Shown in pieces: positions 26,486 through 54,800 of a stretch of DNA of 64,000 bases. Position 1 is the first letter of the stretch. Each line of letters opens with the position of its first letter. A model generated the notes under the pieces. It was not told the origin of the DNA and searched no databases. It saw only the letters and a list, made by a program, of their open reading frames with translations. Source of the stretch: Fonticula alba ATCC 38817. Taxonomy: Eukaryota > Protista > Nucleariida. The stretch is from NCBI GenBank assembly GCA_000388065.2, contig KB932202.1; one strand, 5' to 3'. Both the position numbers and the translations under genes were made by a program.

Positions 26486-28135
26486 GCGGCGGACTTGCAG
26501 CCGCGAGGGCTGTCAGGAGGAGGCGGAGGAGGCGGAGGAGGCGGAGGAAGCGGAGAAAGCGGAGGAGGGGGGGAATTGGCAGGAGACAAGAAGACCAGAG
26601 TGGCTGAGAGGGGGAGGGCAGAAACGGCGAGCCGAAGGGAAAGGAGATGGACGAATAGATGGGAGCAGAGGGGGCGATAGGGAGAGGGGCGGGGGGGGGG
26701 GGGGGGGGAGGAAAAGAGAGGCACGCGCGCGAGAGGGCTGGTGGCAATGTGGAGGAGAGGACCGCTGAGGAGGGCGGAGGAGGGGCTGCTGGATGCGGGC
26801 GGTGGCGCGCCCCAGTGCGGGGGCTCCTGGCTCTTCTCGCGGCCCGGCACCCGCCTGGATGCCTCCGAAGTAACGGGCGAAGGGCCGATCTGCCTGCGGG
26901 GACCACCCCACTCCTCGTCTGCCACCTTCCCCCCTGGTGTGTTGATTGCCAAAGCTTGCATGCACACCATGACAAGCGAAAATGTGGATCTCCCGACAGA
27001 GAAAACCGGTGTATGTGAAAACTGGTTCGGGTACGGGCCAGGAGGGGGGGGGGGGGGGACACAGGCATGGGTCCGTTGGCCGGCAGAGTCGGCACTCCCC
27101 CGCACGCCGGCCACAAACACGGCCCGCGAACCGATGGAACCGGGGGAGCAAGCGCGGGCGGAAAAACGGGTGCTGGCGAATTTGTATTCGGGAACGTGAC
27201 GTGTCAGCTGAGTGTCGCGTGACTCGCGGAATGGCGCGTTGTGGGCCGTAAAACGCTCTGGCTGGTCCATATTGACCCACAACTGTGACCCCTCCCCCCG
27301 GGGGCCCATGCCCTGGGTCCTGGGGGTTGATTAGTGCCGGCTGGAGCGCGCGCCGGACGAGACACGCATGCCCACATGCGTGCCAGTGCCGGGCTTCGTG
27401 ACGCGTTACCCACCGGTCCTGCGACCGTAGTGCCGGAGGCCGGTCACCCGCTGGCTGCCATCCGCCATGTCGGCGCTTCGGCACACCCGACCCAGGCCCA
27501 AGCCGTCGTTGGTCCGCCTCCCGGTGAGACGGCGCCCTGGGCACGCCGGGGGGGGGGGGGGGTGTTGGGCGGGTGTTGGGGGGGGGAAGGAGGGCAGAGG
27601 AGGCTGCCGCTGGAGGATGCCGCGTGGTCGACGTAGATTGCTGTATCCCGGCGGCGGGGGGCGATCGGTCGGGCCGAGGCGAGCCCCCGCCGAGCCGCGG
27701 CCGGCAAGTAGACACGACCGATGGCCGGTCGGTGTCGGCCGGCAGAGGTGGAAATCTTCCCCCCTGGTCCGAACGAAGCAGCGCCAGCGTGTGCGCCGCG
27801 GCCTGTGGCGCTCGTCGCGCGCCTTCCCGCCCCTCGGCACTGAGGCCCTGTGTCGATCGGGCTTTATCCAAAAGAAACCGCATCTCGGAACTCGAGCCCC
27901 CCGAGGCTCCGGCATCGGCTTCCCTCTTTCCCACTCGTCGCACGAACACGTATCCTGACCCGGGCCTTTTGCGCGCCTTTTCTCCTGCCTGTGCTAGCCC
28001 CACGCTGTCCATTTCACTGGGACCTGCCCCCGGTGCTTTCTCTCGCCACGCTAACTCCCTCTTGATCGCCCTTTCGGCTTCCCCCTCACTTGCCGGTCGG
28101 CCTCCAGGAAAGACCATTCACGGAGAAGCGCAAAG

Positions 28136-31100
28136 ATGTCGGCCCCCTCCCGTAACATGGGCTCCAAGCTCCCTCTCTTGATGACCACGGTGGCCGCGGC
28201 CGGCCTGGCCGGCGTCGGCCTGGCCGTGTGGAACACCCCGAAGAAGTACCCGGCAGTCTTCAACCGCAGCGGCTCCGCACACCACCATGCGCACCACCAC
28301 GCCTACCAGCCGGCCACCATGGACACATACATGAATTACCACCCGGCGTCGATGGCCAACCAGCATGCCCTGCCGATGCAGCCGGGCCACTCGCCCGCCC
28401 TGGCCACCCAGCAGCAGCAACAGCGCCCGGCCATGATGACCCCCCAGGCCATGCCGGCCCAGGCTCGGCCCGCTCCCGCCGGGGCGTACGCCCAACAGGC
28501 CACCCCCGGCCCGAGTGCGACCCCCATGCCGGCCCAGACCCGGGGCTACCCGGCGCATGTGCGCGAGGGCATCGAGAGCGGCATGCGCTCTTCCGCGACG
28601 GCGGCGGCGGCGGCAACCGGCTCCGGAGTGCAGTATGTCCCTTCGTACTATTCCGAGTCGGCTGCCCCCATGCAGGCCGCCGGTCCGGGAGCCGCCATGC
28701 GTCGGATGGAGAACTCCAACCAGCTGCCAAACACCCTGGGCTCGCTGGACTGCGCCAGCCAGCCCATCCAGAATGTGGCCGAGCCTGTGTACGCACACCC
28801 TCGGTCAAAGTCGCCCCCCCCCCTCTCTCCCCCCTCCCCCTCGCTTGGGGCCCTCTCTCTTGATGGCCCTTTTTCCGGGGCCCCTTTTTCTTGCCCATCC
28901 CTGGGCTCACCCTGCCGCCGGTGTTGCGCCCGGTCATGTTCGCTGCTGCCTCCGCCTTTCGGGCTCCCGCGCACCAGCGAGCCCCCCCCCCCCGCTCGCC
29001 CTCATGTCACTGACCCCAGCCGACCCCCGACATGCTCCAGGGACAACTTCGCCCCCCAGGACTCCCTGGTCCATGTCCAAGCGGATGGCCGTCCGGGCTC
29101 GGTCCCGGCCACCTACGAAGCCTGGAGCAAGGGCCAGCCCGAGGAGCCCGGCTACCGTGGCTACCTGAACCGCGCGGCCGAGCGGGCCGCCGACGACGCC
29201 CAGGTGGGCTACCCGACCGAGGGCAGCCTGACAGCCGCCTTTCGCCGCGCCGGGGACGCCATCAAGTCCACCTTCTCCGAGACCATCGAGGCGCCAACCT
29301 ACTTCCGGGACTTCTTCACGGGCGAGGACGCCGCCCAGCAGGTGGTCCCCACCGGGGCCCCGGTGTCCCGGTGGGCCGGCTTCAAGGACCGGCTGGCGCA
29401 TTTGCGCGATGACCGGCCCAGCAGCCGGCCCGGCATGCTGGAGGCCCTGAGCGCCGAGGCCAACCAGGCCGCCGACCGGGCCTACGCCGACTGGCACCAC
29501 GCCAAGGGCCGGCTGCTTGAGGAGCTCGGCCGGCTGGAGACCAAGCTTTCCGGCATCTCCGACCGCTTGGTGACCCTCGGCTCGTCGACGTCCACCATGA
29601 ATGAGAGCACCCTGCCCACGTCCCGGCGCCTGGAGGCCGAGTTGCGCGAGGACATCAAGCGCATGAAGGCCAGCATCGATGAGGCCGCTCGCCAGGCCGG
29701 GCAGAACATCGCCCGCATCGGGACCGGCGGCAGCCTTGAGGCTCGCCGGGCGGAGGCCCGCCTGCAGGAGGAGATCCGCCGCAGCTCGGCCGCCCTGCAG
29801 GGGGAGCTCGACAGCATGGGAAAGAGCTGGCTGTCGCATGTCCAGCGGGACTTGGACACCCTGCGCAAGGCGGCCGACCAGCGGTCCCTGGCCGAGGCGG
29901 CCCGCCGGGCGGAGGATCGTGCCCACTTGGGCACCGCACAGGCGGCCGAGGCCATGCAGGAGACGGCTCGCGCCGCGCGGGCCTCCGTCAGCACCGCCAT
30001 GGACCGGGCCTCTTCCGGCATTGACCGGGCCGCGAGCAAGGCCGCCGACACGGCCGAGAGCCTGGTGCGCTCCGGCCGCCAGGCGGTGGAGGAGGTCCAG
30101 ACGGCTGCCGCCGGCATGGTCGCCGGGGCCGCCGGCGGCGTGGCCACGGCCGCCAATGCCGTGGCGGAGGCCGCCTCCAAGACCGCCGCCGCGGTGGCCC
30201 CGGCCCCGGCCCCGGCCCCGAGCCTGTGGGAACGCATCATCGGCAGTGCCCCGGAGCCGCGCAGCGTCCGGGACCCGGAGCATGAGGCCCAGCATGCCCG
30301 GGCCGAGGCCGAGGCCGCGCTGCGTCGCCAGGCCACCGAGCACAAGCACCAGGCGCAGGCCATCTCGGCCGAGGCCAAGGCCGCTCAGATCAACGAGCAC
30401 CATGCCCTGGAGGCCATGGAGGAGGCGCGGCGCCTGCAGCAGCAGTCCCACGAGCTGGCGGCCGGCCATCACCACGCCCCCGCCGGCGGCCCGGTTCACA
30501 TGCCCCCCTCGGGCGGCATGGCCTCGACGGCGGTCTACCAGCCGCTGTCGGCCAGCCCCAGCCCGGGGATGATGCCAGTGGCCCCGGTGTCCCCCGGCCG
30601 GGCACACACCGCCGAGGAGGCCCGCCAGGCGGTCGAGCGCCAGCGTGCCCTGGATCTGGCAGCCGACGAGAAGGAGCGCACTTTGCGCGAGAGCCTGGCC
30701 GAGGCCGGCCACCAGCAGACCCTCGCGCGCCAGGCACAGCGCTCGCAGAATGAGGCCTTCCGCCAGACGCTGGAGTATGACCTGTCGCCGAAGGAGGCCG
30801 ATCGCCTGCGCGAATCGGTCAGCAAGGCCGAGCGCGAGGCCACTGTGGCCCGGGAAAAGTACATGGCCGCCCTGGATCGCGAGAAGCGCGAGCAGGCCCG
30901 CTGGTCGGAGGCCACCCGGCGCCGGGCCATCCAGGAACGCGAGGCCATCCAAGCGGCCGAGGCGGCGGCCCTGGCCAAGAACCGCGGCCAGGCGGCCGCC
31001 CTCGCCGCCGCGCAGACCGCCGCCACCTGGCAGAAGCTCGAGCAGGAGGCCCTGATCTCCGAGTCGAAGGCCCTGGAAGCGGCGCGTATCCTGTCGGAGG

Positions 31101-32884
31101 CCAAGGACGCGGCCCTGCGTCGGGCCCGTGCCGAGCATGATTTGGCCCAGGTCCGTCAGCAGGCGGTTCGCGAGGCGGCCCAGCGCGAGGCCGAGGCCAA
31201 GCGCCTGGCCAGCGCCATTTCCGAGGTGAAGGGCGATGCCCTGCGCCGGCTGAGCAGCTCGGAGAAGGCCCTGGCCAGCGAGCTGTCCAAGCACCAGACC
31301 GAGTACGAGCGCACCCTCAAGCAGCTGGAGGCCCAGAAGCGCGCCAATGAGGAGGCCCTGCTCCGCGAGCGTGAGGCCCTCGAATCGGGCAAGCGTCAGG
31401 CCGCCGCTCGAGCCACCTCCCAGCAGGAGATCGCCCGGCTGGAGCGGGCCGCCGCGGACATCCGCCAGCGCGAGGACCTCACCCGCCAGCAGATGGCCCT
31501 CACGGCTCGGCAGCGCAAGGACCTCCTGGATGAGGCGGCCTCGCGCGAGGCTCGCGCCTTGAAGACCGCCGAGATGGAGCACGCCACCCGGGTGGAGCTG
31601 GTCCGCCAATCGGAGGAGGTGGAGGCGCGCGTGCGCCAGAACGAACTGCGTGACGCCCAGGAGCGCGCTCGCCTGGAGGAGCAGGCCCGCATTGCTCGGG
31701 CCGAGGCGGAGGAGAAGAATCGCGCCCTGCGCCGGGCCACCGACGCCGCCCCGACCATGGTCGGCACCGGCTCCACCGTGGCCGCCGCCCCGATCGGGCC
31801 CACCACCGTGGCCGAGAAGCCCAAGCGCTGGAGCCTCTTCAAGTGGCGCAAGGAGGACCCCCCGGCCGCCGAGGTGATCGCTGCCCCGATGCCGGGGGTG
31901 GCCGTGCCGCCGCTGGCCAAGACCGCCGGCGCTTCATCGGTCGTCGCCCCGGCCACTGGCATTGCCACCGCCACCACCGCCGGCGCCGGCGCCGCCGCCG
32001 CCGCCAAGAAGACCACCACCGATGAGCAAATCGCCGCGGCCGTGAAAGCGGTCGAGACCCAGGCCCGGCGCTTTGACACTCGCCGTGTGTGCTCGCAGCT
32101 CCCGGGCGGCGTGACGCAATGCCTCCTGCTGGAGGAGACGCCCGGCCGGCCGGTTGGCACGGGCTCCCGGTGCCTGGGCGTGGAATACGTCATCAAGGAG
32201 GACACCTTCGCCCGGCTGCCGCTCGGCGAAAAGGTGCGGGCTCGTGGACACTCGCAAGTAAGGCAGGGGGGGGGGGGAGAGAGAGTTGCTTTAGTGTGCC
32301 GCGCCACAGGGGGGTTGGGAGAATTGGTGGATTGTCCACAGGCGGGCGACAATGCGGGCGGTCTGAAGAAGGGGCTGTGTGATGAAGACCCGTGCGCCGA
32401 GGGCGGCAATTCGGCCAGGCAACAAAAGAGAGAGGGGCGCTTGCTGACATATCCTCCTGGCCACTCGCTCCTTGCCTCTTGGTGGGGTGACAACCTCACC
32501 TGCGGCGCGGGACGGACCAACACCCCCCCCCCCCCCCCCCCCCCCCGCACCCCGCCTGCTCCTCAGAACCTGTGGCAGCGCCGCGCTGATGGCACCTTCG
32601 CAAAGACCATTGGAACGTGGCCGGTGCACTCGGACGCCTACACCAACGGAGATGCCTTGGCTCATAATGTCCCGCTCGGCATGCCCCAGATGCTGCAAAT
32701 GACCGCCCACAAGGCGGACTCGGCCACGGTCAAGACGATGCCCGCGCCCAGCCACGAGCCCCTGTACTCCGGCGGCAACACGCGCCTCGGCAAGCACTCA
32801 GACATTGCGGGTGATGCGTGGGCCGGCGGCGCCGCCCACAGCGGCGGAATGGGCACCCCGGAGGGCGGCGCCCGGACCATGTGA
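28136..32884 (+). CDS. Large Ala-rich LEA-like/coiled-coil protein with an N-terminal hydrophobic anchor and a C-terminal degenerate DUF1264 (oil-body-associated protein-like) domain, ~1387 aa, 3 exons
   Basis: Exons 28136-28788, 29041-32233, 32567-32884 (donors GTACGC and GTGCGG, poly-C introns). N-terminal segment LLMTTVAAAGLAGVGLAVW. The spliced C-terminus reads VCSQLPGGVTQCLLLEE..CLGVEYVIKEDTFARLPLGEK|NLW..KTIGTW..VPLGMPQML, matching the DUF1264 pattern C..QC..D..LIG.EY.I...F..LP..E..LW...LPLG.P.LM. Confidence 0.8.
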   Translation: MSAPSRNMGSKLPLLMTTVAAAGLAGVGLAVWNTPKKYPAVFNRSGSAHHHAHHHAYQPATMDTYMNYHPASMANQHALPMQPGHSPALATQQQQQRPAMMTPQAMPAQARPAPAGAYAQQATPGPSATPMPAQTRGYPAHVREGIESGMRSSATAAAAATGSGVQYVPSYYSESAAPMQAAGPGAAMRRMENSNQLPNTLGSLDCASQPIQNVAEPVYAHPRSKSPPPLSPPSPSLGALSLDGPFSGAPFSCPSLGSPCRRCCARSCSLLPPPFGLPRTSEPPPPARPHVTDPSRPPTCSRDNFAPQDSLVHVQADGRPGSVPATYEAWSKGQPEEPGYRGYLNRAAERAADDAQVGYPTEGSLTAAFRRAGDAIKSTFSETIEAPTYFRDFFTGEDAAQQVVPTGAPVSRWAGFKDRLAHLRDDRPSSRPGMLEALSAEANQAADRAYADWHHAKGRLLEELGRLETKLSGISDRLVTLGSSTSTMNESTLPTSRRLEAELREDIKRMKASIDEAARQAGQNIARIGTGGSLEARRAEARLQEEIRRSSAALQGELDSMGKSWLSHVQRDLDTLRKAADQRSLAEAARRAEDRAHLGTAQAAEAMQETARAARASVSTAMDRASSGIDRAASKAADTAESLVRSGRQAVEEVQTAAAGMVAGAAGGVATAANAVAEAASKTAAAVAPAPAPAPSLWERIIGSAPEPRSVRDPEHEAQHARAEAEAALRRQATEHKHQAQAISAEAKAAQINEHHALEAMEEARRLQQQSHELAAGHHHAPAGGPVHMPPSGGMASTAVYQPLSASPSPGMMPVAPVSPGRAHTAEEARQAVERQRALDLAADEKERTLRESLAEAGHQQTLARQAQRSQNEAFRQTLEYDLSPKEADRLRESVSKAEREATVAREKYMAALDREKREQARWSEATRRRAIQEREAIQAAEAAALAKNRGQAAALAAAQTAATWQKLEQEALISESKALEAARILSEAKDAALRRARAEHDLAQVRQQAVREAAQREAEAKRLASAISEVKGDALRRLSSSEKALASELSKHQTEYERTLKQLEAQKRANEEALLREREALESGKRQAAARATSQQEIARLERAAADIRQREDLTRQQMALTARQRKDLLDEAASREARALKTAEMEHATRVELVRQSEEVEARVRQNELRDAQERARLEEQARIARAEAEEKNRALRRATDAAPTMVGTGSTVAAAPIGPTTVAEKPKRWSLFKWRKEDPPAAEVIAAPMPGVAVPPLAKTAGASSVVAPATGIATATTAGAGAAAAAKKTTTDEQIAAAVKAVETQARRFDTRRVCSQLPGGVTQCLLLEETPGRPVGTGSRCLGVEYVIKEDTFARLPLGEKVRARGHSQVRQGGGGERVALVCRATGGLGELVDCPQAGDNAGGLKKGLCDEDPCAEGGNSARQQKREGRLLTYPPGHSLLASWWGDNLTCGAGRTNTPPPPPPPRTPPAPQNLWQRRADGTFAKTIGTWPVHSDAYTNGDALAHNVPLGMPQMLQMTAHKADSATVKTMPAPSHEPLYSGGNTRLGKHSDIAGDAWAGGAAHSGGMGTPEGGARTM

Positions 32885-34362
32885 GAGAAGCCCGGCCGCT
32901 CGCGCGTCCAGCCACAGTCTCCCCCGGCCAAGCACCGACCGGCCTCCACGAACCCGGCCCGGCTCGCGCCCCACCCGGCCCGCGCCACCCCCGAGCCTAA
33001 GCATCCATTGAAAGGGATGGGGGGTGGGTGGTGCGAGAGGGGAAAAAGTAGGCAGGCCAAAAGTCGGGCTGACTGGCGGCCGTGCCTCTTCACGGAAGAG
33101 GCGGCCCCCCTGAGCAAATATGAGGGCTTTTTTATGCATGTAAGAGAACAAGCGAGAGTCCGAGGGCAAGTGAGCAAAAAAAAACACGACAAGCACAAGA
33201 TCGAGGAGTATATGGGCGTCTTTTGCCCGGCGGGGGGGGGGGGGGGAGGCTCTCGTGAAGTGAGCAGAGGACACAGGTCCCGTGGAGGACGCCACTCTCG
33301 AGTGGCTAGGCCCCTGGCTCTCCCCGCACACGCGACCCGCCTCTCCTTTTGCCCTCGGTGGATGGTGGCTGTTGGGCCAGAATTGGCGCCTATCACCCCG
33401 AGAAGAATGCCAAGTTGATGCCGTGTGCCTCCTTCGGGGGGGGGGGGGGGGGCGTGCGCCCCCTCGGGGGTTGGAATACACCTACACCATGTCTCAACAG
33501 CCAAGACGCTCCTCGGGGGAGGGGGCTAGACGGGGACCGGCCCATGCTCTGGCAGACACAGGAAGGGGGGACATCGGGAAAGGCATGTGCGCTGGGAAGG
33601 GGAAGGAGCTGATAGATTTATATGATACAGGCACTGGGCTTCAAAGTGTGGCTGCGTGGTGGCGCACACACAGACCACCGAAGAGGACAGAGGGTATGGC
33701 TGGAGCAGAGGCCGAAGGGGCGACAAAGACGGGGAGGCAGAGAGAGAGAGAGAGAGAGAGAAAGGAGGGAAGAAGAGCAGTGTGGCCAACATGTGGGCAA
33801 GTTGCTTCTGTTTCCGGTGATCTTGTCACCCCTCTTCTCCGTGGCTCGTTATCTTTTCTTTTTTTCTTTTTTCATTAAACGGCACGTGTCACGCTTGGAG
33901 ACGTTGCCGACGTCAGGTAACAACAAGGGCAAGAAGAAGGAGGGGGAGGGGCAGGGGGGGGGGGGGGGGGGCGGGGGGGGGGGGGGGGGGGGGGGGAGAG
34001 CGCGCGGGAGCGGATGCACACGCACAGCTTTATGCCAGACAACCCCTCAGTCGCCCGATCCGTCCTCANNNNNNNNNNNNNNNNNNNNNNNNNNNNNNNN
34101 NNNNNNNNNNNNNNNNNNNNNNNNNNNNNNNNNNNNNNNNNNNNNNNNNGGATGTTTCTCAAGGTCAAGGCCGGAAGGGGGAGAGGGAGAGACCAGGAGA
34201 CAGAGCGCGGGATCGGCCTACGCTGGCCTCCATGGATGCCCTCTCGTATGACATCCCTCAATGATTCCGGCAGCTGTAGGGGAGGGGGGGGGGGGCGCGG
34301 GCAGGGAGAGCAAGGGGGAGGGGAGGGGAGAGGGGAGACAGGGCTCCCCTGCAGCCGGGCTC

Positions 34363-42891: not shown

Positions 42892-45800
42892 TCACACCAA
42901 CTTCACTTGGAAGGCCGGGGGCGAAATGCCCGTGCCGAAGGAGGACGCCTGCGGGAACATGCTGACCATGCCCAGATGCGAGGACCGGCCATCGGCCCCG
43001 GCGGGAGTGACACTGGCATCGCGGTCTCGGCCCCAGGCCATCAGCCGGCCACTGGCATACACGGCAAAGAGCCATGCCGCGTCGGCCGAGAAGGTCACCG
43101 CCGTCACCGGGTCCGTCAGGGTGGTGGCCGGGCTGGCCGAATCCAAGGCACCGGTGGTCGCGGTGACCAGCCCGGGTGGCGGCAAAACGCGCACCAACGA
43201 CAGATCCCACGAGGACCGGAGCTGAATGGCACCGGAGGACAAACCCACCGCCACCAGGTTGACATTTAGCCCCTCGGGAGCCGAGCTGATGGCCACGCAG
43301 AGGGGCGTCCCTTCGCGGGCCAGGTCCAGGCCGACCTCACCCACGAGGGCCCCATTGACGCTCCACAGGGCAACCATGCCGCCGGAGGCCGGGGGATCCG
43401 GCCCAAGCCCCGGAGCCCGGGTTCGCAGCGGCGACTGGAAGGCCGCCGGCGCCGCCGGTGTTGTGGCCGGCCCGGCCCCGGCCCCGGCCCGGGGCCCGGC
43501 CATTTGATTGACGAAGGATTCCGGGCAGAGGTCGAGCGCCGCGCGACGGTCAGCCCGGCTGGCCGCCACCGGCGGCCCGGACACCGTAATGATGTCGCCG
43601 GTGGTGGGGGAGGCCGTCACAGCCACCATCGGCCCGGGATGCGGGCCGAGGGTCTGTGCACATGTCATGCTATTCAAGTCCCACACAAAGCAAGTCCGGT
43701 CGATGGGTCCACCTCCACTGAGGACAAAGCTGAACTCCGAGCAGACACTTGAGGCACCGGCCGGCACCGGGGGGGGGGGGGGAAAGCAGCGGCACATGTT
43801 AGTTCACTGGCCAAACCCATGTCCCCCTCCCCCCGAGGGGGAAACACGCGACACACGGAGGGGAAATAGAGAGAGAGAGAGAAGCAGGCCAAATAGGATT
43901 GACGTACTGCACGCAGGTCACCGCGTCCACATGCCCCGATAGGGGGACCTTGCGGTGGAGGATTTGCAATGGTGGCGCAGGGCGCGTCCGGGCCGCCTCC
44001 ACCAGCGTGCTGACCACGGCATTCGTGGCACGCGGCGGGTGCCCAGTTACATCCCACACGGTGACCACGCCGCAAGTGCTGCCGGTGGCCAGAATGTGCC
44101 CCGGCCGGGAGGCCGCCGCGCAGGTGAAGTCATCATCATCCATCAGCGGCGGCCACAGGGCCGGGCAGGAGGGCACCCCGACGGCCGCGGCCTCCGCCGC
44201 TTGGATCACCGCCGTCTCGGCCTCGTCCACCAGCACCCGCACGCGCAGGCTGTCCGGCGACACCATCGGCCGAGAGGCCGCCGCCACGCCACTGACCCCG
44301 GCTCCGGGTGGCATGGCTTGGAAGAAGTCCTCCACCATGCTCCCCGGGCCGCCGGGCATCGGCACCAGTGGGAAGACCTTGGCCCTGGAACCGATACCAG
44401 CACCGGAGCCAGCACCGCCGCCCGCACCCCCGCCGATGGTCAGCGGCGATGAGGGATGCGACGACCCGGCAAAGAGCCCAAGCCCGGCCCCGGGGCCGGC
44501 TGTCATCAGTGAAGCCGCCGACGTCGAGGGTCCAAGGGACCCGGTGCCCGAGCTCCAGGACAGCCTCGGGACCTGCGACTGCGAGTGCGACGGCTGGTGG
44601 TGGGGGCCATACCCGATGGGCGAGCTCAGGGACAGGGTGCTGGGCGACTGACCAAGCGACCCCGGGACCGGGGGCGGCGGCGTGCCCACCGTCATGCCCA
44701 GCCCCCCGGTGGCGTAGTAGCTGCCCCGGTGCGAGGAGGCCACCGACGGCCGCCGGCTGCTGACCATGCTGGCGCTGCCGCCGGTGGTCGCTCGATCGCT
44801 GGCGGCCAGGGCCGCGGCCGCCAGAGTCACCGCCGCCGGCGGAAGATCCGACAGGGTGGCCATGAAGGCCAAGTCCACCTGGGTATTGGGCGAGTACTTG
44901 GACAGGGCATGTGCCACGCGGAGGTCGGCCGTGGTTTGCCGTGCCACCGCCGTGGCCGCATCCGTGGCCCGCTGCACGCGCGCATGGCCGCGAGATTGGT
45001 GCCAGGAAACCACACACGGCTCCCGGGCACCGGCCGCCCGGCCGCCGAGGCCCATGCCCATGCCCAGGGGCGAAGACCCGGCGGCCACCGGCAGCGCCGG
45101 CAGCATCGCCCGGCCAGGCCCCAAAACATACAGCGTCTGCGCCGCATCATGGTACCAAAGCTGGGCAAAGTGCAGCCCCCCGGCTCCGGGCGCCGCGAAG
45201 GGCAACTGCAGGGTCAGCCCACCGGCACGCGCGGCCGGCAGGCCGACCCCCCCGAGGGTCCCCCGGCCGTGGACCTGCTCCAGCAGCAGGCCGAAGAGGG
45301 CTTGCTCCTCGGAGCCCAGGTGCTCCAGACGCAAAGCCAGCAAGTCACGCTCCCATGCCGGGCGAATGCTGACCCAGGTATTGCCCACTGCCGAGCACAG
45401 GGGCGCCACATCGGGATGCGTGCGACCCGGATGCCGGCTGGTGAACAACTGGGCCGGGGTCTGGCCGTAGCTGGAAATTTGGGTGATCACCGCCGCCCGT
45501 TGCGTCGGGTCCGAAATGGCATCGATGTCCACGCTGCCCTCATAGGTCAATGGGTGGAAGGTGTTCAGCGCGGCCACCGCCTCCGGGCCGGTTTGCTTGT
45601 AGCCAAAGATCAAGTCAATCCAGTGGGCCAGGCTGGCCGACACCAGCGGCGACTCGAGGGCTGCCCGTTGCTGCCGGACAAAAAGACGCGCATCATGCCG
45701 CGCATACGGCGGCAGGAGGACATCGCTGACACGCTGCTCATCCTGCTTGATGCCCAGATCATAGCGGTTGGTGTTGATCAGGAACTCCGGCATGAAGAAG

Positions 45801-48799
45801 AACTCCGGGATCAGCTCCTTGACATCGGTGCTGGAATACCGGCTGGAAAGGTGCCACGTTTGCTCGACCGAGTGGAAGGTCCGGTCCGGGATGTCGAAGC
45901 GCCCATCCTGGAAGTTCAGGAACAGGTGGGTGAAGGGCTCCAAGCGAACCAAGAAGTGCAAAACAATCCCGGCATTGGAGTAGTGCGAGCCATAGTGGTA
46001 CGGCACCACCGGGCCCAGGCCCACGGTGAAGTCCCCGGGATTGGCCATGTGCTCTTCCTCCTGGGCCATGTCCTCCAGCTGCTGGTACTTGCGCACAAAG
46101 CGCTCCAGCCGGTCGGGACTTTGGGCACCCATGGGCCGGGTCAAGTCGCGGAAGGTTTCCCGCCGGGTCAAATCCAGCCGCGAGCTGGTGTAGTCCGCCA
46201 GGATGAACGGGAAGATCGGATACTGGGACAAATCATTGAAGGTCCGCCCGGCCAGCGTGTTCAAGTGCATCAGGTAGTCGAAGTTGCTCAGCTGGCCGGC
46301 GGCCCACTGCCGGCTCAGATGCTTCAAGCGGGGGGGCTCCCGCGGGCCGGGAGGAGCGGCCCCGGTGTGACCGCCCGGCCCGGCCGGGCCAGCCAGCCCC
46401 CCATGGCCGCCACCGTGACTGGCACTGGCAGCATGCCGGGCGGCATCGGCCCCGCGCTGGGAAACATGCTCCAGCAGCAGGCGATCCACCTCGTCCCGGC
46501 TTTCCCGCGACCGGAAGGTCACCAGGTAGGTCTTGCCATTTTGCATGAAAATCTCCAGCCCATTGTTCTTCAGCTGATACCGGCGCCGGTAGATGGCGCT
46601 CACCCCGGCCAAGGGCAGGGAAAAGTGCCCATCATAGCGCCGCGCATCGAAGCGCTTGTTCTCCGGGAAGTGGCTGGGCCCGCGTGGTGACTTGGCCCCG
46701 GGCCCCCGGCGTGCATGGGACGCCACCGCCTCGCCATCCCCATGACCATCATCCGAGCCATCCTCCGAGAATGCGGGCTCCGGCACGAACACCAGGAACT
46801 TCTGGCGAATCAGCAGCTCGCCGGTAATCTGACTGAAGGGGGTGATCCGCTCGCAGGGCAGCGGGCCGAAGATCACATTCTCCAGGGACATGCCCATGAT
46901 GGCATACGGCGAGGCGGCCGAAGCGTGCACAAAGTCCCGGTCCCCGGTGGCCGCATGCCCGGCCGGGGTGCCGGGACCGGTGGCCAGGTCCGTCGGAGTC
47001 TTGGCCAGGACCACCGTGTCGACATCCTCGCCGAGGACCGCCAGACTTGCCACCGGCAGGCCGGAGTCCACGTCCACCGGTTCCGGGGGGATGCGCAAGC
47101 GCGCGCGCACGCGCAACGCCTCGATCAGCTCCTCCAGCAGGATGGTCCGCGAAGAGGGGACCAGCACCGGGGCGCACAGGTGGCGGACGGTTGGCTGGCC
47201 ATCCGGGCCCGGGCCCACGGCCACCGGCAGGTCCTTGGTGATGGGAGGCAGGACTTCGGCCACCGGGTCACCGGCGGGGGCCGCAGCGCCGGCCAATCCC
47301 AAAGACGAGGGGGCCGGCATGATGACGGCCGCCGCATCGTCCTCCTGGCCGGAATCCTCCTCGGCGGTGATGGAAGCCACCGCGTGCGACACGGAATGTG
47401 CCTCGGCCAGGGAAATCCGCGTCACCAGGAAGGGGAAGTCCCGGTTGCTCGGGCGAATGCGTGCCCGCACCCGTGATGGCCCCTCGGTCCGATCAAGCAT
47501 CCACTGGTACATGCCGACCGGGGCCGGGAGGGTGCTCGGGACCCGGGGATCCGGGTCATAGTGCGGCAGGGCGGCGATCTGTTCCTGCGTGGGCACCGTG
47601 GCGAAGGGCGACCGAGGGCTGGCCATGCGCTCAGCCACACGACCCCAAGTGACCATGACAAGGTGGTCCACCTGGTTGGCCTGCTGGGCCCGGCGCATGG
47701 CCGGCATCAGGGAGCTTGTCGTGTGCTCCATGTGGTCGTTGATGAAGCGTGTCCGGCGGAGGGACAGCTCCGGCCGCTTGAGGCTCGACGCATGGAGCAC
47801 CTGATCCCGAAGCATGAGGCTATCGGCGCGGGCAGGGGACATGGTGGCGGCCGCCGGTGTGTCAGATCAGGAAGGGGACGAGAGAAAGGGAGCCCCCAAT
47901 GGGCCTGGGCAGCGGGAAGAAAGAAAAAAAAAAAAAGAAGCAGAAAAGATGCCAGTGCAACAAATCGCGCCGCCCCCTCCTCCCCGTATGCCCACGCCCC
48001 TCCCCATCCCCCTCTCGGGGCCTTTGGGGGTGGTTCGGTGTCCTGGACACACGGCGCGCACCTGTCCTCGGCACACTTGGCCACCTTGGCACGCATGGCC
48101 TCGTCTTCCTTCTGGAAGTCGGCCCGGATCTTGAGCGTGAAGAAGTCCCGCACCGAGAGGGCGGCATCGGGCTGATTCAGCGGGGTGAAATTCCGCACAA
48201 AGAGGGCGGCCATGTCCTGCGACGACTGTGTTGGCAGGTTCATCAGTGGAATGGAGATGTCGGCCTTGGTCGAGGACTGGAGAACATGCCGGAAGAGGGC
48301 CATGGCGCTGCTGGCGATGTAGGCCTCCTCCGAGTCGAACATCAGGCTCAGCAGGAAGAGCATCATCTGCCGGAACTGGACATTTGAAATGAGCGGCCCG
48401 ATGACGGTCTTGTTGTTGAGCAGCAGCCGCAGGGCCGTCTTGTGGACCTGCCGACTGCGGTTTGGCATCAGCAGGTAGATGAGCAGGTGCGTCTGCGGGA
48501 GGGGCACATTGCACACGGTCGGAGTGATGGGACTGTCAGAGGAAGAGGAAAAACGCACGCAGCGCGCGCACACACACATACACACACACACACACACACG
48601 CAGCACACACGCAGCACACACGCAGCACACACGCAGCACACACAGCGCACACACAGCGCACACACAGCGCACACACAGCGCACACACAGCGCACACACAG
48701 CGCACACACAGCGCACACACANNNNNNNNNNCAGCGCACACACAGCGCACACACAGCGCACACACAGCGCACACACAGCGCACACACAGCGCACACACA

Positions 48800-48862
<63 letters not shown>

Positions 48863-51800
48863 GCGCGCGCACACACAGCGCACACACGCAGCACACACAG
48901 CGCGCGCGCGCAGCACACACACAGCCATCGCCCGGAGGCGAATGCCGATGGCGCGGAGGGACGGGCAGAAAAGGGGGTCAAGAAAGGAAGGACGCCTTCC
49001 TCCGAGCGCACCTTGATCGGGAAGAGGGCCGACTCGAAGGCAAAGAAGGGCAGAACATCCATCGGGGCCTCATGACTCTTGTTATCGAGCATGGTGTTGA
49101 AGAGCGACGTGAAGAACTGGGTGATCAGTCGCTTGTTCTGCTTGCGGTACAGGCGGGCCACCGGCATCGGGAAGGGTCCGAGCGTGGCCACGGTCGGAGT
49201 TGACGGGCCCGACGGCGCCGGGGCCGGGGCAAGAGCCGGGCTCGGCACCGGAGCCGGGGTGGCTGCTGCCACGGGCGCGGCCAGGGGAACCTCGTCGTCT
49301 CCAGCGGCGGTCAGGGACACGGGCGTGCTCGGGCCAGGCGAATGCCGGCCCACCGGGGTGTCGGGAGACTCGAGCCCCGGCAGGACAGCCTCCCCCTCGG
49401 CGCCCGGCGACTGAACCGGCATCGGAGACAGGGGCTCCGAAGTGGCGGCAACAGCCGCGGCGGCGGCGCTGGCAGCAGCGGCGGCGGTAGCCGCCGCCGA
49501 CCCCTGAGACCGACGGAAGATGGACAGCGGCCGAGGGGGCCGAGTGGCCGATTCGCGCCGAGAAGCGGCGGCGGCGGCCGCGGCCGCCGCGGCCGCCGCA
49601 GCAACAGCAGCACCTGCGGCCGGGCCATTGCCCTGCACTCGCAGCGGGATCTCCGAAGCCACGCGAGTCAACAGGCCATCCGTCGAGCAGATGTTGTCCA
49701 GCACGAAGCGACACAGGTAGATCCACTGGGTGTCGTTGTACTGCTGCATATACCCGGACAGGGTGAACAGCAGCAGGACCCGCTGGATGAAGGCAATGTG
49801 CAGCAGAGAAAGGCCCCCGGCTCGTTGGCCGGAGAGCGTCAGCAGCTCGCCCCGACACACGGCCGCTTGGTGCCGAGCCAGCGACGCAAACAGATGCTCC
49901 ATGGCCTCCAGACCATCATGCTGGAAGAGGAAGAGACAAATCTGCGACAGCAACAGCACCAGCAAGTCCTCCACCTGGATGGCCATGAAGGACAGTGGCA
50001 GGGCGGCCGGCGGGGCCTCCATCATGTTGGCCAAGTCCGCGTGCCACTGGTGCGCGGTGCCGGTGCTGGCCGGCGCCGTGCGACTCGTGCGGCTCGAAGC
50101 CGGCGTCGAGCGCGGCCCCGGAGAAGCACCACTCACCGGGGACGCCGGTCCCGAGGTTTCGGCCTGAACCGGTGGCAGAGTGTCCACCGGCGACTCGACC
50201 GACAGTCGGGGGAGCTCGGTCGAGGCGGGCTCCTCCAGGAGGAACTCCTCCTGAGAGCCGGCCCCGGCCAGGGCATCCGAAGGCGGGGCATTGACATGGA
50301 CCAAGTCCTCCAGGGGGAAGGGCGGCGCTGTGGGATCGACCGAAGTGAGTGGCAGCAGGCCCGAGGTCGAGGGGTTGGGCGGCGGAATCGAGGGCACATG
50401 CGGCGCCATGGCCATCGGCGGGACATCCGAATCGAAGGCCGCCGAGCACCGGGCCGGCGACGCGAGGAAGTCGCAAATGCGGGTGTACACCGCCGGCTGG
50501 GAGATCACCCGCAGCATGGAGTTCACAGCCGGACTATAGGGGTCTACACTGTCCGAGCGCTTGCGATGGGCAAAGAAGAAGACCATGATGCTGTTGATCA
50601 CCTCATACCACAGGCAATTGGCGGCGGACGCCGCATTGCGAGGGAGCCACGCATGGCGTGGCGGCCAGGGCCCGGTATCGACATCGTCGCCGGTGGCTCC
50701 CGGCCCGGGAGCCGGGCGATCCGACGCGATGGTTACTGACTCCAGCAGATCCAGCACGGGGATCACAAAGTTGGCCTACATGTGTGAGTGAGTGAGTGTG
50801 TGAGTGTGTGTTTGTGAGTGTGTGTGTGAGTGAGTGAGTGAGTGAGCGAGTGAGTGAGTGAGTGAGTGAGTGGGTGAGTGTGTATGCGTGTTTGCATATA
50901 TGCATGTATGCATATATGTGTGTGTTTGCGTATATGCATGTTTGCGTATATGCATGTTTGCGTATATGCGCGTTTGCGTGTGTGTGTGTGTGTGTCAGGA
51001 AAAGGGATGAAAGCATGTCTTCGAGAATGGAGGCAGGGGTAGACTGAACGCACGGCAATCGAGGCAGCATCCGGCAACTCCGGCATTCGGGCATCCGGGA
51101 TGCTGTTGATCGGCTCATGACGCATCATGCGCAGGAGCGTGTCAAAGAGCTGATATGAGGAGGCTCGATAGCTGCGAAGCTGATGCCCAAGCGACGCAAA
51201 CCCATCCGAATGGAGCAGATACCGAAGCACCGGCTCGGCCACAAAGTGGTCCTTCACATCGGCCCAGGAAACGGCGCCCGACCCCAGGGGATTGCCCTCG
51301 GCGAAGGCAGCACCGCCGGCCGCCCCGGCGGAAGAGACACCGGCACCGGCGCCGACAGTGGCTCCCCCGGCGCCGGAGGCTCCGCCGCCGGTTCGGCCCC
51401 CGCTGACGGGCGACCGGATGCCCGAGGAAAAGTGGATGTAAAGGTCCAAGATTTGCAGGAAGGCAATGCGCGTGTACAGCAGCGGGTGATCGATCATGGT
51501 GATGACATTGTCCACGGTCAGATGGAACATCAGCTGGTCGATGGCCGGTTGGCCATGCTTCAGCATCAGCTTCAGCACCGTGCTCAGGACCAACTCGCGC
51601 GCGGTTGACGGCTCCGATGGGGCGATCAGCAGCTGGTCCAGCGCGCCAATGCCAGCAGCATCGCCAGCCCCGGCCCCGAGCCCAATCCCAGGGCCGAGGC
51701 TGGGCGACCCGCCGATCGAGGACTTGACCGAGTCCTGGTGCGAGACAATCAAATACTCGGCGATGGCGTGGATGCCACTGGTGGTGATCTGGAAATTCAG

Positions 51801-54800
51801 GAAGCACGACAGGAGGTTGACGGTCTCGGTCAAGATCGGCAAGTTCTGGCTCCACGGACTGTCGCCCGGCGGCTCGGCAGCCGGCCCGGCGGTCGAGCCA
51901 GAGGGGGCGCCGGGATTCAGCGGAGACTCGCCGGATTCCAGGCCGTCTGGGGTGTCGATCTGCGAGCCTTCCACCACGCCCGGGCCACCGGCCGGAATGG
52001 TCACCACGACACTGGCGCCCGGGGCATCGGTCGGGCTGACAAAGGGAACCTCACTGCGTGCGTCGCAAATTTGAATCAGATCCAGCACCAGATCCAGCAG
52101 ACCGGCCGCACTGAGCTGGTCCCAATTGGCCAGCGAAATGCTGTGCGCATAGGCCGTGGTGGCTGGCTGACTGGCCTCCGGGCTGATGTTGCAAGGGAAG
52201 GTCACAAGCTGGCGGATCTTGGCCAGGAGGCGCTCGCGCACGGTCACCCGCGCCCGGGACCAAATCCGCCAGTCCAGCAGCAGCAAGCGCGCCGGCTCGG
52301 GATCGGTGATGGCCAGGAAGAAGACATCCGGGAAGGCCTCCTGCGAAATGAGCGTGCAGCAGATCAGCAGCACCAACTGCAGCAGCGAGTCGTCCAGGGT
52401 CTCGGCCGGCAGGATGTCCCGCAGCAGGGAGGCCACCAACTCGAAGCCACGCAGGTCGGCGAAGCTCCGCGCCGCAATCGGATGCGCCCGAAGGACACTC
52501 CCCAGGAGGGCCAGGCAGCTGCGGAAGGCATGCGGCGCATGCGGACACCCGCCTGCCGCCCGAGTGGCAATCCGGCCGGCCATGTAAAGGATGGCATCCA
52601 CCCCGCCAACGCCCATCAGCGTTTCGGCCAGGCTGGACACATGGACCACGGTCACATCGCCGGTGATGGTGCCGGACCGGTTAAGCAGCAAGGTCCGCGC
52701 GGTTGCCGAGCTTGGGGCCCGGCCGGCCAGCGGTGCCGCCCCCGGGCCGGGCATGTCGCCGCCGGTGGTAGATGCACCGGACCCGGCCAGCGGGATGGCC
52801 TGCTGCAGACGATGATCCCGCGCGTGGTAGAAGAAAGACAATCGCGCAGCAAGGTCCACCTGGCCATAGAGAACGGCCAAGTCCCGCAACGAATGCATGG
52901 ATGATAGATCCAGCCCGGTGGTGGCAGCCGGCCCCGGCCCGGAGCCAGCCCCGGCGTCGGAGCCTCCCCCGAGCGAGTGCCGGTGGATGGAACCCGCCGG
53001 GATGGTGCCCGGGGACCCGATCGACACGCTGCTCGTGCGTGCCAGCCAGTTGAGCAGCACCTCGCTGGCGAATGCCGGGTGCGGCAATTGCGTCCGACCC
53101 AAGTCCGACAGGTCACCCGAATAGCTGGGCCCCAGGGAGTACAGCACAAAGGCGGCCGCCTCGCTGATCGCCTCATCGAAGGCATACATGCTGGCCAGAT
53201 CAAAGGCACAGGGGAGGCTGCCATCCACGCGGCGATTGAAGAGCAGCACATTCGGCGGGGCCAGCAGCTGGGCATCCGTGTGCTCCGACCCGAAGAGGGT
53301 ATACCGCGGTGCGGGGGCGGCGGCGGCGGCGGCCGCGGCCGCGGCCGCTGTGCCGGCCACACTGGCCGGCCCATCGCTCGGCTGCTCGCCAGGTCCCGAT
53401 ACCGGGGCCACCAACACCCGGACTCCATTAACCCACACATCCGGGTGCCAGGACGCCTCGGACCCGGCCTCGATGCTGAAGACCACATGGTACCAAACAT
53501 CATTCTGGAAGCCGGCCGGCGCGGAGAACCGGAAAACCACCGTCGGGCCGAGGGCAGCGGCCAGTGGGACGGCAGCGCCGGCGGGACCAGCGCCGGCCAG
53601 GCCGCCCGGCGGCGTGGTGGCCAGGGCAACGTCCATCCCCTGGCGATGGAGCGACGTCGACACCAGGACAGCCTCGCCCGGATCGGCGGGCCCCCCCCCG
53701 GTGGCCGCCGGCCAGCAGGACACCTGGAACAGGGAAAGCACACTGCCGGAGTTCAATTGATCGGCCGTCGGACCGGTGAGTCGGAACCAAATGCCGAAGG
53801 CCAGCCCGGCCCCGGGCCCCAGGGGAGGCCAGGTGATTTGCCGGGTCAGGGGGAAGCGCAACGTCGGATGCACCTCCTCCAGCCGGTGGAAGGCCGTATG
53901 GAACCGGGGCTCCGGCGGCCAGCTGCTCAATTGCCCGGGGCGCGTGCCGCAAATGGCCAGCAGTGGTTCCAGCGTGGCCGGCGCAAAGTCCGACCGGTGT
54001 GCCAGGTCCAGAGCCAGGCGCAGCTCGGCCGGCCGCAAACGATGCCGAGTGATCCGTCCCACCAGGTCCACGATGCGGCGCTGCACCAGCAGCGCGGCCA
54101 CCGACCCCGGCAGACCACTTGGCATGAGGAACACCGGCTGGAAGGATGTCAAGAGGACCCCCACCAGGCCGTAGTCCGACAGAAGCAGGCGATTGCGGAT
54201 GTGCGCCCGGGCCAGCACGGCCACCTGATCCAACACGCAAACCACCAGCAGCTTGGTGCACACGAAGCGGCTGCTGCTCAGAGCCAATGGATCGCTCTTC
54301 CGACCGGATGCCGGCAGACAATTGCCGACATAGAGGCTCGACAGGATTTGCACCACCGAGCCCACCAGCTCCGGCAGTTCCAGCAGGACCGCCCGCGTGG
54401 CGGCCAGGCTCGACTCGGCGCCGGGATTGCTGGCCGAATGGCCGGCCGATCGGGCCCGAGCTGCGGAGCTGTTGCCAGCACCCCCGGGCCCGGTCCCGCC
54501 CAGGGCCAGCCGGGCACTCATGTGCAGCGACGGCGACAGGGCCAGGGTGTAGGGCTCGAGGAAGTCCGCAAAGAGCCCGGCCGGACAGCCAGCCAGTGGG
54601 CTGGTCAGCACATGGCGAATGGCCGCCTGGAGACCGGCCGAGGCGGCTGCCGAATTGGCCGCCGCCTCGGCATCGCCAGGCCCATCGCCAGCCCGAAGGA
54701 GGTCCACCACATTGAACCGGAAGTCGCCGATGGCGATGTCAGCCTCCTCCGCGGTGTCGGAGGGAGAGCCCGCGGTCGGGCCAGCAGCCGGGGCATCGGT

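What the first reader, a model, noticed from the sequence alone, without database searches (positions are those of the whole stretch)
28136..32884. Giant anchor-LEA-like-coiled-coil protein capped by a degenerate DUF1264/OBAP domain
DUF1264/OBAP proteins are normally small (~200-250 aa) stand-alone proteins, linked in plants to seed oil bodies (established). Here the domain ends a ~1390-aa protein with an N-terminal hydrophobic anchor, Ala/Thr-rich amphipathic LEA-like stretches (AMDRASSGIDRAASKAADTAESLV), a long charged coiled coil and short aromatic motifs (SLWERIIG, KRWSLFKW). The domain appears to lack the conserved His clusters (RRVC instead of HHYC, and no HSH segment after LW), suggesting a non-catalytic binding role. 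This is a candidate lipid-droplet or organelle tether/protectant for spores or cysts (inference), and I do not recognise the architecture as described.
Basis: partly seen in the sequence, partly recalled or inferred. Interest (0 to 1): 0.7.

Follow-up and report, generated by a model that had tools for sequence, protein, structure and literature searches.

The report
Giant membrane protein with dead OBAP domain
The slime-mould-like amoeba Fonticula alba has a one-of-a-kind 1387-residue protein with a membrane anchor, lipid-surface-type helices and a long rod, ending in a stripped-down copy of the oil-body-associated (OBAP/DUF1264) domain that has lost every residue expected to hold its metal; what it does is untested.

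Summary
Window 28136-32884 (+) is a three-exon gene of Fonticula alba. It is already in databases as hypothetical protein H696_01126 (1387 aa), with PF06884 precomputed.

The C-terminus matches Pfam DUF1264 above the curated cut-off (32-38 bits against 25). Intron 2 falls inside the family motif EK-x-LW, and splicing restores that motif.

The domain is badly degraded:
- All 6 conserved His columns are substituted or deleted.
- A 25-residue block after LW (consensus WHSHVYEVKSG…) is missing.
- The first strand (GFHFY) is missing.
- Only 24 of 75 conserved columns are kept.

In-frame third-position GC stays near 0.9 through the linker into the domain, so the fusion is probably real and not two merged genes.

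LEA_4, perilipin and apolipoprotein membership is not supported. However, residues 409-611 show a strong 11-residue amphipathic periodicity (z up to 13), the physical type that binds lipid surfaces. Residues 737-1126 form a charged helical rod.

I found no homologue of the whole protein, no other long protein with this domain and no paralogue. No RNA evidence was obtainable. The lipid-droplet or tether role remains inference.

The scan had noted this same stretch once before in an overlapping window, not on other DNA. Interest is moderate to low: a singleton new architecture of a known domain.

The parts
28136..28788 (+). Exon 1 (aa 1-217 plus two bases of codon 218)
   Evidence: Start ATG at 28136. 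In-frame third-position GC (GC3) rises from 0.68 to 0.92 here. The three exons translate to P0001.
28169..28231 (+). Single hydrophobic segment, aa 12-32 (LPLLMTTVAAAGLAGVGLAVW): probable membrane anchor
   Evidence: The only 19-residue window with Kyte-Doolittle hydropathy above 1.4 (maximum 1.85). It runs 21 residues without a charge, flanked by R6/K11 and K36/K37/R44.
28232..28786 (+). Low-complexity His/Gln/Pro/Ala/Met-rich region, aa 33-217, including HHHAHHH at aa 49-55
   Evidence: Composition in 100-aa blocks. No Pfam family matches.
28789..29040 (+). Intron 1, 252 nt, GTACGC...CCAG, 49% C
   Evidence: Removed in the database model P0001. GC3 falls to 0.70-0.74. No homology support, because the flanking protein has no relatives.
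29041..32233 (+). Exon 2 (aa 218-1282): helical regions, linker and the first half of the DUF1264 domain in one exon
   Evidence: GC3 is 0.86-0.98 throughout, with no dip between the rod and the domain.
29612..30220 (+). Amphipathic helices with 11-residue periodicity, aa 409-611 (27% Ala, 20% Ser+Thr+Gly)
   Evidence: Hydropathy period 3.70 (z 5.4) for aa 409-542 and 3.64 (z 13.3) for aa 500-611 against shuffles. Autocorrelation peaks at lags 4, 7, 11, 15, 18 and 22.
30596..31765 (+). Charged helical rod, aa 737-1126 (38% charged, 22% Ala, almost no Pro or Gly): coiled coil or single alpha-helix, about 58 nm if fully extended
   Evidence: Stretch prone to helix and poor in Pro/Gly. Period 3.52, z 4.5. 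12.3 opposite-charge i/i+4 pairs per 100 aa.
31817..31852 (+). Basic-aromatic motif KPKRWSLFKWRK (aa 1144-1155) inside the Pro/Ala/Thr/Gly linker (aa 1127-1206)
   Evidence: Position, sequence. A role in binding a membrane interface is inference only.
32006..32233 (+). DUF1264 domain, first half (aa 1207-1282): helix, then three core strands including TRRVC in place of AHHYC, then GVEY and LP..EK
   Evidence: Pfam best stretch aa 1221-1286, profile positions 17-77. AlphaFold2 confidence (pLDDT) 83-97 for this core. Alignment.
32234..32566 (+). Intron 2, 333 nt, GTGCGG...CTCAG
   Evidence: GC3 0.68. Splicing joins GEK to NLW and restores the family's EEK-x-LW spacing.
32567..32884 (+). Exon 3 (aa 1283-1387 and the stop): DUF1264 second half (LWQ, FAKTIGTW, PLGMPQM), then a Gly/Ala-rich tail that could not be modelled
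   Evidence: The invariant family residues W, K, W, P, G and M are kept. The tail has pLDDT 32-45. TGA at 32882-32884.

Best explanation
SHOWN. This is one three-exon Fonticula alba gene encoding a 1387-aa, lineage-restricted protein. In order it has:
- a single N-terminal hydrophobic anchor;
- a disordered His/Gln/Pro-rich stretch;
- about 200 residues of amphipathic helix with 11-residue periodicity;
- a charged helical rod of about 390 residues;
- a Pro/Ala-rich linker with a basic-aromatic motif;
- a terminal DUF1264/OBAP domain.

The domain keeps the family's beta-sheet core but has lost its first strand, a 25-residue strand-helix segment and all six conserved histidines.

INFERRED. The domain can no longer hold the metal that the family is predicted to bind, and that one member has been shown to bind. 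It is therefore a pseudo-enzyme head used, if at all, for binding.

The most likely working model has four steps:
1. The N-terminal segment anchors the protein in an internal membrane such as the ER, with the bulk of the protein in the cytosol.
2. The 11-mer helices lie flat on a lipid surface, either a lipid-droplet monolayer or a membrane with packing defects.
3. The rod acts as a spacer.
4. The dead OBAP head and the KRWSLFKW motif make a second contact.

On this model the protein is a scaffold or tether at a lipid surface.
For: Gene and fusion:
- The database model and its exon coordinates are verified.
- In-frame third-position GC is about 0.9 across exon 2, including the linker before the domain, and 0.68-0.74 in the introns.
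- The first half of the domain lies in the same exon as the rod.
- The intron 2 junction restores the family spacing EK-x-LW.

Domain:
- Pfam PF06884 scores 32.2-37.8 bits against a cut-off of 25.
- All 12 invariant family columns are kept.
- The nearest ESM Atlas shapes are all DUF1264 clusters, TM 0.53. This is partly circular, because the model was built on a family alignment.

Degeneration:
- 0 of 6 His columns and 24 of 75 conserved columns are kept, and there is a 25-residue gap.
- Against the canonical model P0098, the missing parts are E66-74, E134-135, H137-141 and H152-162.
- The family is predicted to have a binuclear zinc site, and a Salmonella member binds 0.5-0.9 Zn per monomer (bioRxiv 10.64898/2026.10.18.759936).

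Lipid-surface helices: period 3.64-3.70 with z 5.4-13.3, and autocorrelation at lags 11 and 22.

Anchor: one 21-residue uncharged hydrophobic run, longer than a typical signal-peptide core, with slightly more positive charge on its C-terminal side.

Context:
- Plant OBAP1 is needed for oil-body structure (PMC11876164, citing Lopez-Ribera 2014).
- The Fonticula genome has seipin, but no perilipin, caleosin or LEA_4 was detected.
Against: - There is no expression, splicing or localisation evidence. The four RNA runs laid matched only homopolymer tracts.
- Oil-body association of the domain is known only for plant members that keep the histidines. Bacterial members are lipoproteins or secreted, and the two closest relatives (P0002, P0003) begin with signal-peptide-like segments. 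The domain itself therefore does not argue for lipid droplets or for a cytosolic location.
- There is no significant match to any lipid-droplet, LEA or apolipoprotein family.
- The negative genome searches for perilipin, caleosin and LEA_4 had no positive control.
- Long Ala/Glu/Arg-rich helical proteins are common in GC-rich genomes.
- With no orthologue, selective constraint on the degenerate domain cannot be measured. It may be a decaying relic.
Confidence: 0.35

Rival explanations
1. The protein is a general coiled-coil organelle or cytoskeletal scaffold, and the DUF1264 remnant is a functionless relic of an old gene fusion. No lipid-droplet or lipid-surface role is involved.
For: - Only 24 of 75 conserved columns survive. 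Two structural segments are deleted, and the last roughly 60 residues are unmodelled, with AlphaFold2 confidence (pLDDT) 32-45.
- There are no relatives in which to see conservation.
- There is no lipid-droplet family match.
Against: - All 12 invariant family residues are kept and the sheet core models at pLDDT 83-97.
- Third-position GC in exon 3 stays at 0.84-0.88 and the frame is intact. A free-drifting relic would be expected to lose these.
- The 11-mer periodicity of aa 409-611 is far beyond chance.
Confidence: 0.22
2. The protein is secreted or exposed on the cell surface. The N-terminal segment acts as a signal peptide or type II anchor, and the rod and the domain lie outside the cell, for example in the stalk matrix or spore coat that Fonticula secretes.
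For: - The closest canonical relatives, P0002 and P0003, start with signal-peptide-like hydrophobic segments, and bacterial members are lipoproteins (bioRxiv 10.64898/2026.10.18.759936).
- A small-residue G-L-A motif at aa 28-30 could serve as a cleavage site (sequence).
Against: - The hydrophobic run is 21 residues, which is long for a signal-peptide core.
- Flanking charge is not more positive on the N-terminal side.
- There are only 4 Cys and 2 N-x-S/T sequons in 1387 aa.
- A highly charged Glu/Arg/Ala rod is more typical of cytosolic proteins (my own knowledge).
Confidence: 0.15
3. The protein is a LEA-type desiccation or stress protectant of spores. The amphipathic 11-mer helices fold on drying to stabilise membranes, independently of lipid droplets.
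For: - It has 11-residue amphipathic periodicity and an Ala/Thr/Ser/Gly-rich composition like group 3 LEA proteins.
- OBAP and LEA proteins accumulate together in maturing seeds (abstracts listed).
- Fonticula forms dormant spores (my own knowledge).
Against: - There is no LEA_4 profile match in the protein or the genome.
- LEA proteins are normally soluble and lack anchors and long rods.
- There are no expression data for spores.
Confidence: 0.12
4. The gene model is an artefact. Two genes, an anchor-plus-rod protein and a short DUF1264 protein starting at an internal Met (aa 1124 or 1168), are read as one because GC-rich DNA has few stop codons.
For: - Open frames are long everywhere in this window, including an 891-aa antisense frame at 28934-31609.
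- Internal Met codons exist upstream of the domain.
- No RNA evidence is available.
Against: - In-frame third-position GC stays at 0.86-0.98 across aa 1100-1282, with no non-coding-like dip. Both introns and both flanks fall to 0.62-0.76.
- The database annotation gives a single model.
- The domain lacks the family's own N-terminal part.
Confidence: 0.07

Closest known systems
Plant oil-body-associated proteins OBAP1/OBAP2 (Pfam PF06884, DUF1264)
   Same: The same domain family by profile (32-38 bits against a cut-off of 25). All 12 invariant core residues are shared.
   Different: - Plant OBAPs are stand-alone proteins of 231-247 aa (PMC11876164).
- The 123 family members sampled here, none of them identified as plant, keep the His motifs GFHFY, AHHYC, WHSH and WHTW at 86-100%. 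Plant OBAPs as such were not checked.
- The Fonticula domain sits at the end of a 1387-aa anchored helical protein.
- It lacks all six His, the first strand and a 25-residue segment.
Bacterial 'OBAP family' lipoproteins and zinc-binding DUF1264 proteins (such as Salmonella A0A3W0S055)
   Same: The same fold family. These are the nearest sequence relatives found (P0002-P0005 at E about 3e-4).
   Different: - They are about 250 aa, secreted or lipid-anchored.
- They have a predicted binuclear metal pocket and measured zinc binding (bioRxiv 10.64898/2026.10.18.759936).
- The Fonticula copy has none of the conserved histidines.
Lipid-surface proteins with 11-mer repeat amphipathic helices (perilipins, apolipoproteins A/E, group 3 LEA, alpha-synuclein)
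   Same: An 11/3 hydropathy periodicity over about 200 residues, with a weakly hydrophobic Ala/Thr/Ser-rich face.
   Different: There is no sequence-family membership. LEA_4 and Perilipin give no hit, and Apolipoprotein scores E 0.21 and 11.7 bits against a cut-off of 90. BLAST self-comparison detects no discrete sequence repeats.
Membrane-anchored coiled-coil tethers (golgin-like proteins)
   Same: One transmembrane anchor plus a helical rod hundreds of residues long, with a terminal binding head.
   Different: - The anchor is N-terminal, whereas golgins are typically anchored at the C-terminal tail (my own knowledge).
- No GRIP, GRAB or other tether domain is detected.
- The heptad signal is weak.

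Membership tests
DUF1264 / OBAP (PF06884) | Profile match above Pfam's gathering score | tested here: met
   32.2 bits on P0001 and 37.8 bits (E 1.9e-9) on aa 1150-1387, against a cut-off of 25. The unspliced frame scores 25.5 bits.
DUF1264 / OBAP (PF06884) | Invariant core residues (C..QC, G-E-Y, E, W, K, W, P-G, M) | tested here: met
   All 12 columns that are invariant across 124 sequences include the Fonticula residue.
DUF1264 / OBAP (PF06884) | Six conserved histidines (GFHFY, AHHYC, WHSH, WHTW), the candidate metal ligands | tested here: not met
   0 of 6 are kept. They are replaced by a gap, R1232, R1233, Q1286, a gap and G1298.
DUF1264 / OBAP (PF06884) | Complete domain (171 profile positions, all secondary-structure elements) | tested here: not met
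   The best stretch covers profile positions 17-77 only. Elements E66-74, E134-135, H137-141 and H152-162 of the canonical model have no counterpart, and the C-terminal helices are not modelled.
DUF1264 / OBAP (PF06884) | Zinc binding, and for plant members association with oil bodies | not testable with these tools
   This needs metal analysis of recombinant protein and localisation experiments.
LEA_4 (PF02987, group 3 LEA) | Profile match to the 11-mer LEA repeat | tested here: not met
   No LEA_4 hit at E <= 10 on any piece of P0001. None was found in the six-frame genome search, which had no positive control.
LEA_4 / perilipin / apolipoprotein type (physical class, not a family) | Amphipathic helices with 11-residue (3.67 residues per turn) periodicity | tested here: met
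   Period 3.64-3.70, z 5.4-13.3 against 200 shuffles. Autocorrelation is 0.31 at lag 11 and 0.34 at lag 22.
Apolipoprotein A1/A4/E (PF01442) and Perilipin (PF03036) | Profile match above the curated cut-off | tested here: not met
   Apolipoprotein scores 11.7 bits, E 0.21, against a cut-off of 90. Perilipin gives no hit.
Coiled-coil tether | Sustained heptad (3.5) hydrophobic periodicity over the rod | tested here: inconclusive
   Period 3.52 with z 4.5 over aa 737-1126, but autocorrelation at lags 7 and 14 is about 0. With 38% charged residues and 17% large hydrophobic residues, a single alpha-helix is equally possible.

The most novel reading that the evidence does not exclude
Fonticula, which has seipin but no detectable perilipin, caleosin or oleosin-type coat, may have built its own lipid-droplet coat or ER-to-droplet tether. 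It would have done so by fusing a membrane anchor, perilipin-like 11-mer helices and a long spacer to an OBAP domain that was turned from a zinc enzyme into a binding head. That would be an independent invention of a droplet scaffold in the sister lineage of fungi. It would also be the first evidence that the OBAP fold recognises lipid droplets without its metal site.
Probability: 0.15. Interest if true: 0.6.

Novelty: new variant of a known kind. Interest (0 to 1): 0.35.

Why it matters
DUF1264/OBAP is a widespread family, with at least 2,268 homologues according to the N-Zinclopedia preprint, and its biochemical role is unknown. It is linked to oil-body stability in plants and predicted to be a binuclear metal enzyme.

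A natural version that keeps the fold core but has lost every conserved histidine, and that is welded to an anchor, lipid-surface helices and a rod, is a ready-made separation-of-function case. If it still goes to lipid droplets, droplet recognition by OBAP does not need the metal site. If it does not, the domain is a relic.

It would also bear on how a fungal sister lineage without recognisable perilipins coats its droplets.

As it stands this is a singleton hypothetical protein with no expression or localisation data, so the practical value is modest.

Tried and rejected
- **RNA evidence.** `look-up of sequencing runs` listed no run shown to hold the stretch, only 24 RNA runs added by species label. 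Four of them (X1, X2, X8, X9) were laid on 27800-33300. They gave 7-36 reads each, all partial, and only on the C-run at 28814-28840 and the G-runs at about 32266 and 33232-33249. There is therefore no support for or against expression or splicing.
- **Whole-protein homologues.** The word search over the full 1582-aa frame returned only the protein itself.
- **Long relatives carrying the domain.** The search drawing its words from aa 1207-1387 returned only the protein itself among 711 candidates of 763-2427 aa. Its sensitivity is limited, because the domain is so diverged.
- **Exhaustive phmmer with the domain.** Only four hits reached E <= 1e-3, all canonical proteins of 262-323 aa.
- **Paralogues in the genome.** None was found for exon 1, for aa 218-720 or for PF06884.
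- **Solved structures.** The PDB sequence search gave nothing. Foldseek against the PDB with the Fonticula model gave no hit at E <= 1e-3. VIA-align wide with the canonical model gave a best Z of 4.0. No solved fold is known for the family.
- **Other searches that gave nothing.** ESM Atlas features for aa 218-620 gave no usable hit. NCBIfam gave no family, even for the canonical P0098. A literature search for the locus tag H696_01126 found 0 papers.
- **Rejected idea.** I considered that the missing WHSH block might be hidden in intron 2. The intron translation shows no similarity to it and has non-coding third-position GC. NLWQRRADGTFAKT is contiguous in the DNA.
- **Handling of the spliced model.** All searches of the spliced protein used the database record P0001 by reference. 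I handed no self-joined sequence to any search or folding tool. The exon coordinates were checked once in a script by comparing the joined translation with P0001, and only true/false was printed.
Full report
**Organism and gene.**
The window is from Fonticula alba. The best protein match is 'hypothetical protein H696_01126 [Fonticula alba]' (P0001, 1387 aa), with PF06884 already precomputed. The genome copy has 31.3 Mb in 214 contigs.

The frame at 28136-32884 (+) is open for 1582 codons. The database model removes two segments:
- 28789-29040: 252 nt, GTACGC...CCAG, 49% C.
- 32234-32566: 333 nt, GTGCGG...CTCAG.

A script confirmed that the three exons translate exactly to P0001. That was a comparison only. 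Every search of the spliced protein used P0001 by reference, and no self-joined sequence went to a search or folding tool.

**Is it one gene?**
In-frame third-position GC (GC3) is a sharp coding signal in this genome. It is 0.62-0.68 upstream of the ATG and 0.86-0.98 throughout the exons. It is 0.70-0.74 in intron 1, 0.68 in intron 2, and falls again after the stop.

There is no dip across the Pro/Ala/Thr-rich linker (aa 1127-1206) that separates the helical rod from the DUF1264 domain. The first half of the domain lies in the same exon as the rod.

Intron 2 interrupts the family's EEK-x-LW motif, and splicing restores exactly that spacing (GEK|NLW). This is independent support for that junction. 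Intron 1 has only the compositional support.

No RNA evidence could be obtained. No listed run is shown to hold the stretch. The four RNA runs that I laid matched only homopolymer tracts. I put a merged gene model at about 7%.

**The DUF1264 domain is real but degenerate.**
Pfam PF06884 scores 32.2 bits (E 1e-7) on P0001 and 37.8 bits (E 1.9e-9) on aa 1150-1387, against a cut-off of 25. The best stretch covers only profile positions 17-77 of 171.

An exhaustive phmmer search of 1.84 billion representative proteins with aa 1207-1387 found only four proteins at E <= 1e-3. All are canonical DUF1264 proteins of 262-323 aa that score 172-229 bits against the Pfam model.

I collected 123 family members, 188-382 aa with a median of 254, and aligned them with the Fonticula domain:
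- All 12 invariant columns are kept: the two Cys, G-E-Y, E, W, K, W, P, G and M.
- Only 24 of 75 columns conserved at 85% or more are kept.
- All six histidine columns conserved at 86-100% are lost: the H of GFHFY, the two H of AHHYC, the two H of WHSH, and the H of WHTW. They are replaced by a gap, R1232, R1233, Q1286, a gap and G1298.
- A 25-residue block after LW (consensus HSHVYEVKSGQL..PG.P..AE.ELM) is absent.

The DNA there is contiguous (NLWQRRADGTFAKT at 32567 onward), so this gap is a real deletion and not a splicing artefact.

*Structure models.*
- AlphaFold2 with the family alignment gives the Fonticula piece a confident sheet core. Model confidence (pLDDT) is 83-97 for residues 21-100 of the piece. 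The last roughly 60 residues are unmodelled.
- A canonical member, P0098 from Pseudomonas yamanorum, models at pLDDT 92.
- By alignment, the canonical elements missing from Fonticula are the first strand (E66-74), the short strand and helix around WHSH/VYEVK (E134-135, H137-141) and helix H152-162.
- The nearest ESM Atlas shapes are all DUF1264 clusters, TM 0.53. This is partly circular, given the alignment used.
- Neither model has a solved-structure relative.

*What the His loss means.*
A 2026 preprint (bioRxiv 10.64898/2026.10.18.759936) predicts a buried binuclear metal site in DUF1264. It also measured 0.5-0.9 Zn per monomer in a Salmonella member.

The preprint text I read does not list the ligand residues. 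Equating the six conserved His with the ligands is therefore my inference. With all of them gone and part of the pocket deleted, the Fonticula domain is very probably metal-free and catalytically dead.

**The rest of the protein.**
- *Anchor.* The only strongly hydrophobic segment is aa 12-32. It has 21 uncharged residues, flanked by R6/K11 and by K36/K37/R44 plus a HHHAHHH tract. Its length favours a membrane anchor over a cleaved signal peptide, and the charge balance slightly favours a cytosolic C-terminus. Both points are weak inferences.
- *aa 33-217.* His/Gln/Pro/Ala/Met-rich low complexity.
- *aa 218-408.* No assignment.
- *aa 409-611.* Hydropathy periodicity is 3.70 (z 5.4) and 3.64 (z 13.3) against shuffles. 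Autocorrelation peaks at lags 4, 7, 11, 15, 18 and 22. This is the 11/3 pattern of amphipathic helices that lie on lipid surfaces. The composition is 27% Ala and 20% Ser+Thr+Gly.
- *Family membership of those helices.* Not supported. There is no LEA_4 or Perilipin hit, and Apolipoprotein scores 11.7 bits against a cut-off of 90.
- *aa 737-1126.* Almost free of Pro and Gly, 38% charged, with period 3.52 (z 4.5) but negligible autocorrelation at lags 7 and 14. It is a coiled coil or a single charged alpha-helix, about 58 nm long if extended.
- *Linker.* It carries KPKRWSLFKWRK (aa 1144-1155).

**Uniqueness.**
I found no homologue of the whole protein, no other long protein with this domain and no paralogue of any part in the genome. 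The long-protein search depends on words shared with a very diverged domain. A full list of PF06884 architectures was not available to me. 'Unique' is therefore likely but not proven.

**Function.**
Nothing here tests function. The reading I favour, at about 35%, is a membrane-anchored scaffold or tether at a lipid surface. The anchor sits in an internal membrane, the 11-mer helices lie on a droplet monolayer or a membrane, the rod acts as a spacer, and a dead OBAP head makes a second contact.

*Points in favour.*
- Plant OBAP1 is needed for oil-body structure (PMC11876164, citing Lopez-Ribera et al. 2014).
- The genome has seipin, but no perilipin, caleosin or LEA_4 was detected. Those negative searches had no positive control.

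*Points against.*
- Outside plants the family looks secreted or periplasmic.
- The two closest relatives begin with signal-peptide-like segments. The domain therefore does not argue for droplets or for the cytosol.

*Rivals.*
| Reading | Probability |
|---|---|
| Generic helical scaffold with a relic domain | 0.22 |
| Secreted, matrix or spore-coat protein | 0.15 |
| LEA-type spore protectant | 0.12 |
| Merged gene model | 0.07 |

**Verdict.**
This is a new, so far singleton, architecture of a known domain family in an already annotated hypothetical protein. Interest is moderate to low until expression and localisation are known.

Noticed in passing
window 28789-29040 and 32234-32566: Both annotated introns are multiples of three (252 and 333 nt) and have no stop codon in the gene's frame. 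The unspliced frame therefore reads through as 1582 aa, and intron retention would keep the frame. Other frames of the same introns are also open, so GC/C-rich composition explains part of this.
   Followed up: partly
window 43799-56705 (-): A very large gene of the BEACH family. PH_BEACH and BEACH domains (E 1e-113) lie in the ORF 43799-47839. A neurobeachin-type DUF4704 solenoid lies in the ORF 50763-56705.
   Followed up: partly
window 28934-31609 (-): An 891-aa antisense open frame lies opposite the helical rod. It is most likely an artefact of Ala/Glu/Arg codons, which lack stop codons on the opposite strand, and not a gene.
   Followed up: no
window 28814-28840, about 32266 and 33232-33249: The RNA runs offered under the same species label matched only these C and G homopolymer tracts. 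All reads were partial and ran on into long poly-C or poly-G. These runs give no information on this gene.
   Followed up: yes
G000:C6:453212-453439 (-): The genome has a seipin exon (PF06775, 31.5 bits, above the cut-off). Six-frame searches for Perilipin, Caleosin and LEA_4 found nothing, but they had no positive control.
   Followed up: partly
window 28280-28300, and aa 620-700 of P0001: There are histidine-rich tracts outside the domain: HHHAHHH just after the anchor, and GHHHAP plus several HxxH pairs in aa 620-700. They contrast with the loss of every conserved His inside the domain.
   Followed up: no
window, about 34080-34170: A run of N (an assembly gap) shows up as X in the ORF translations downstream of the gene.
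   Followed up: no
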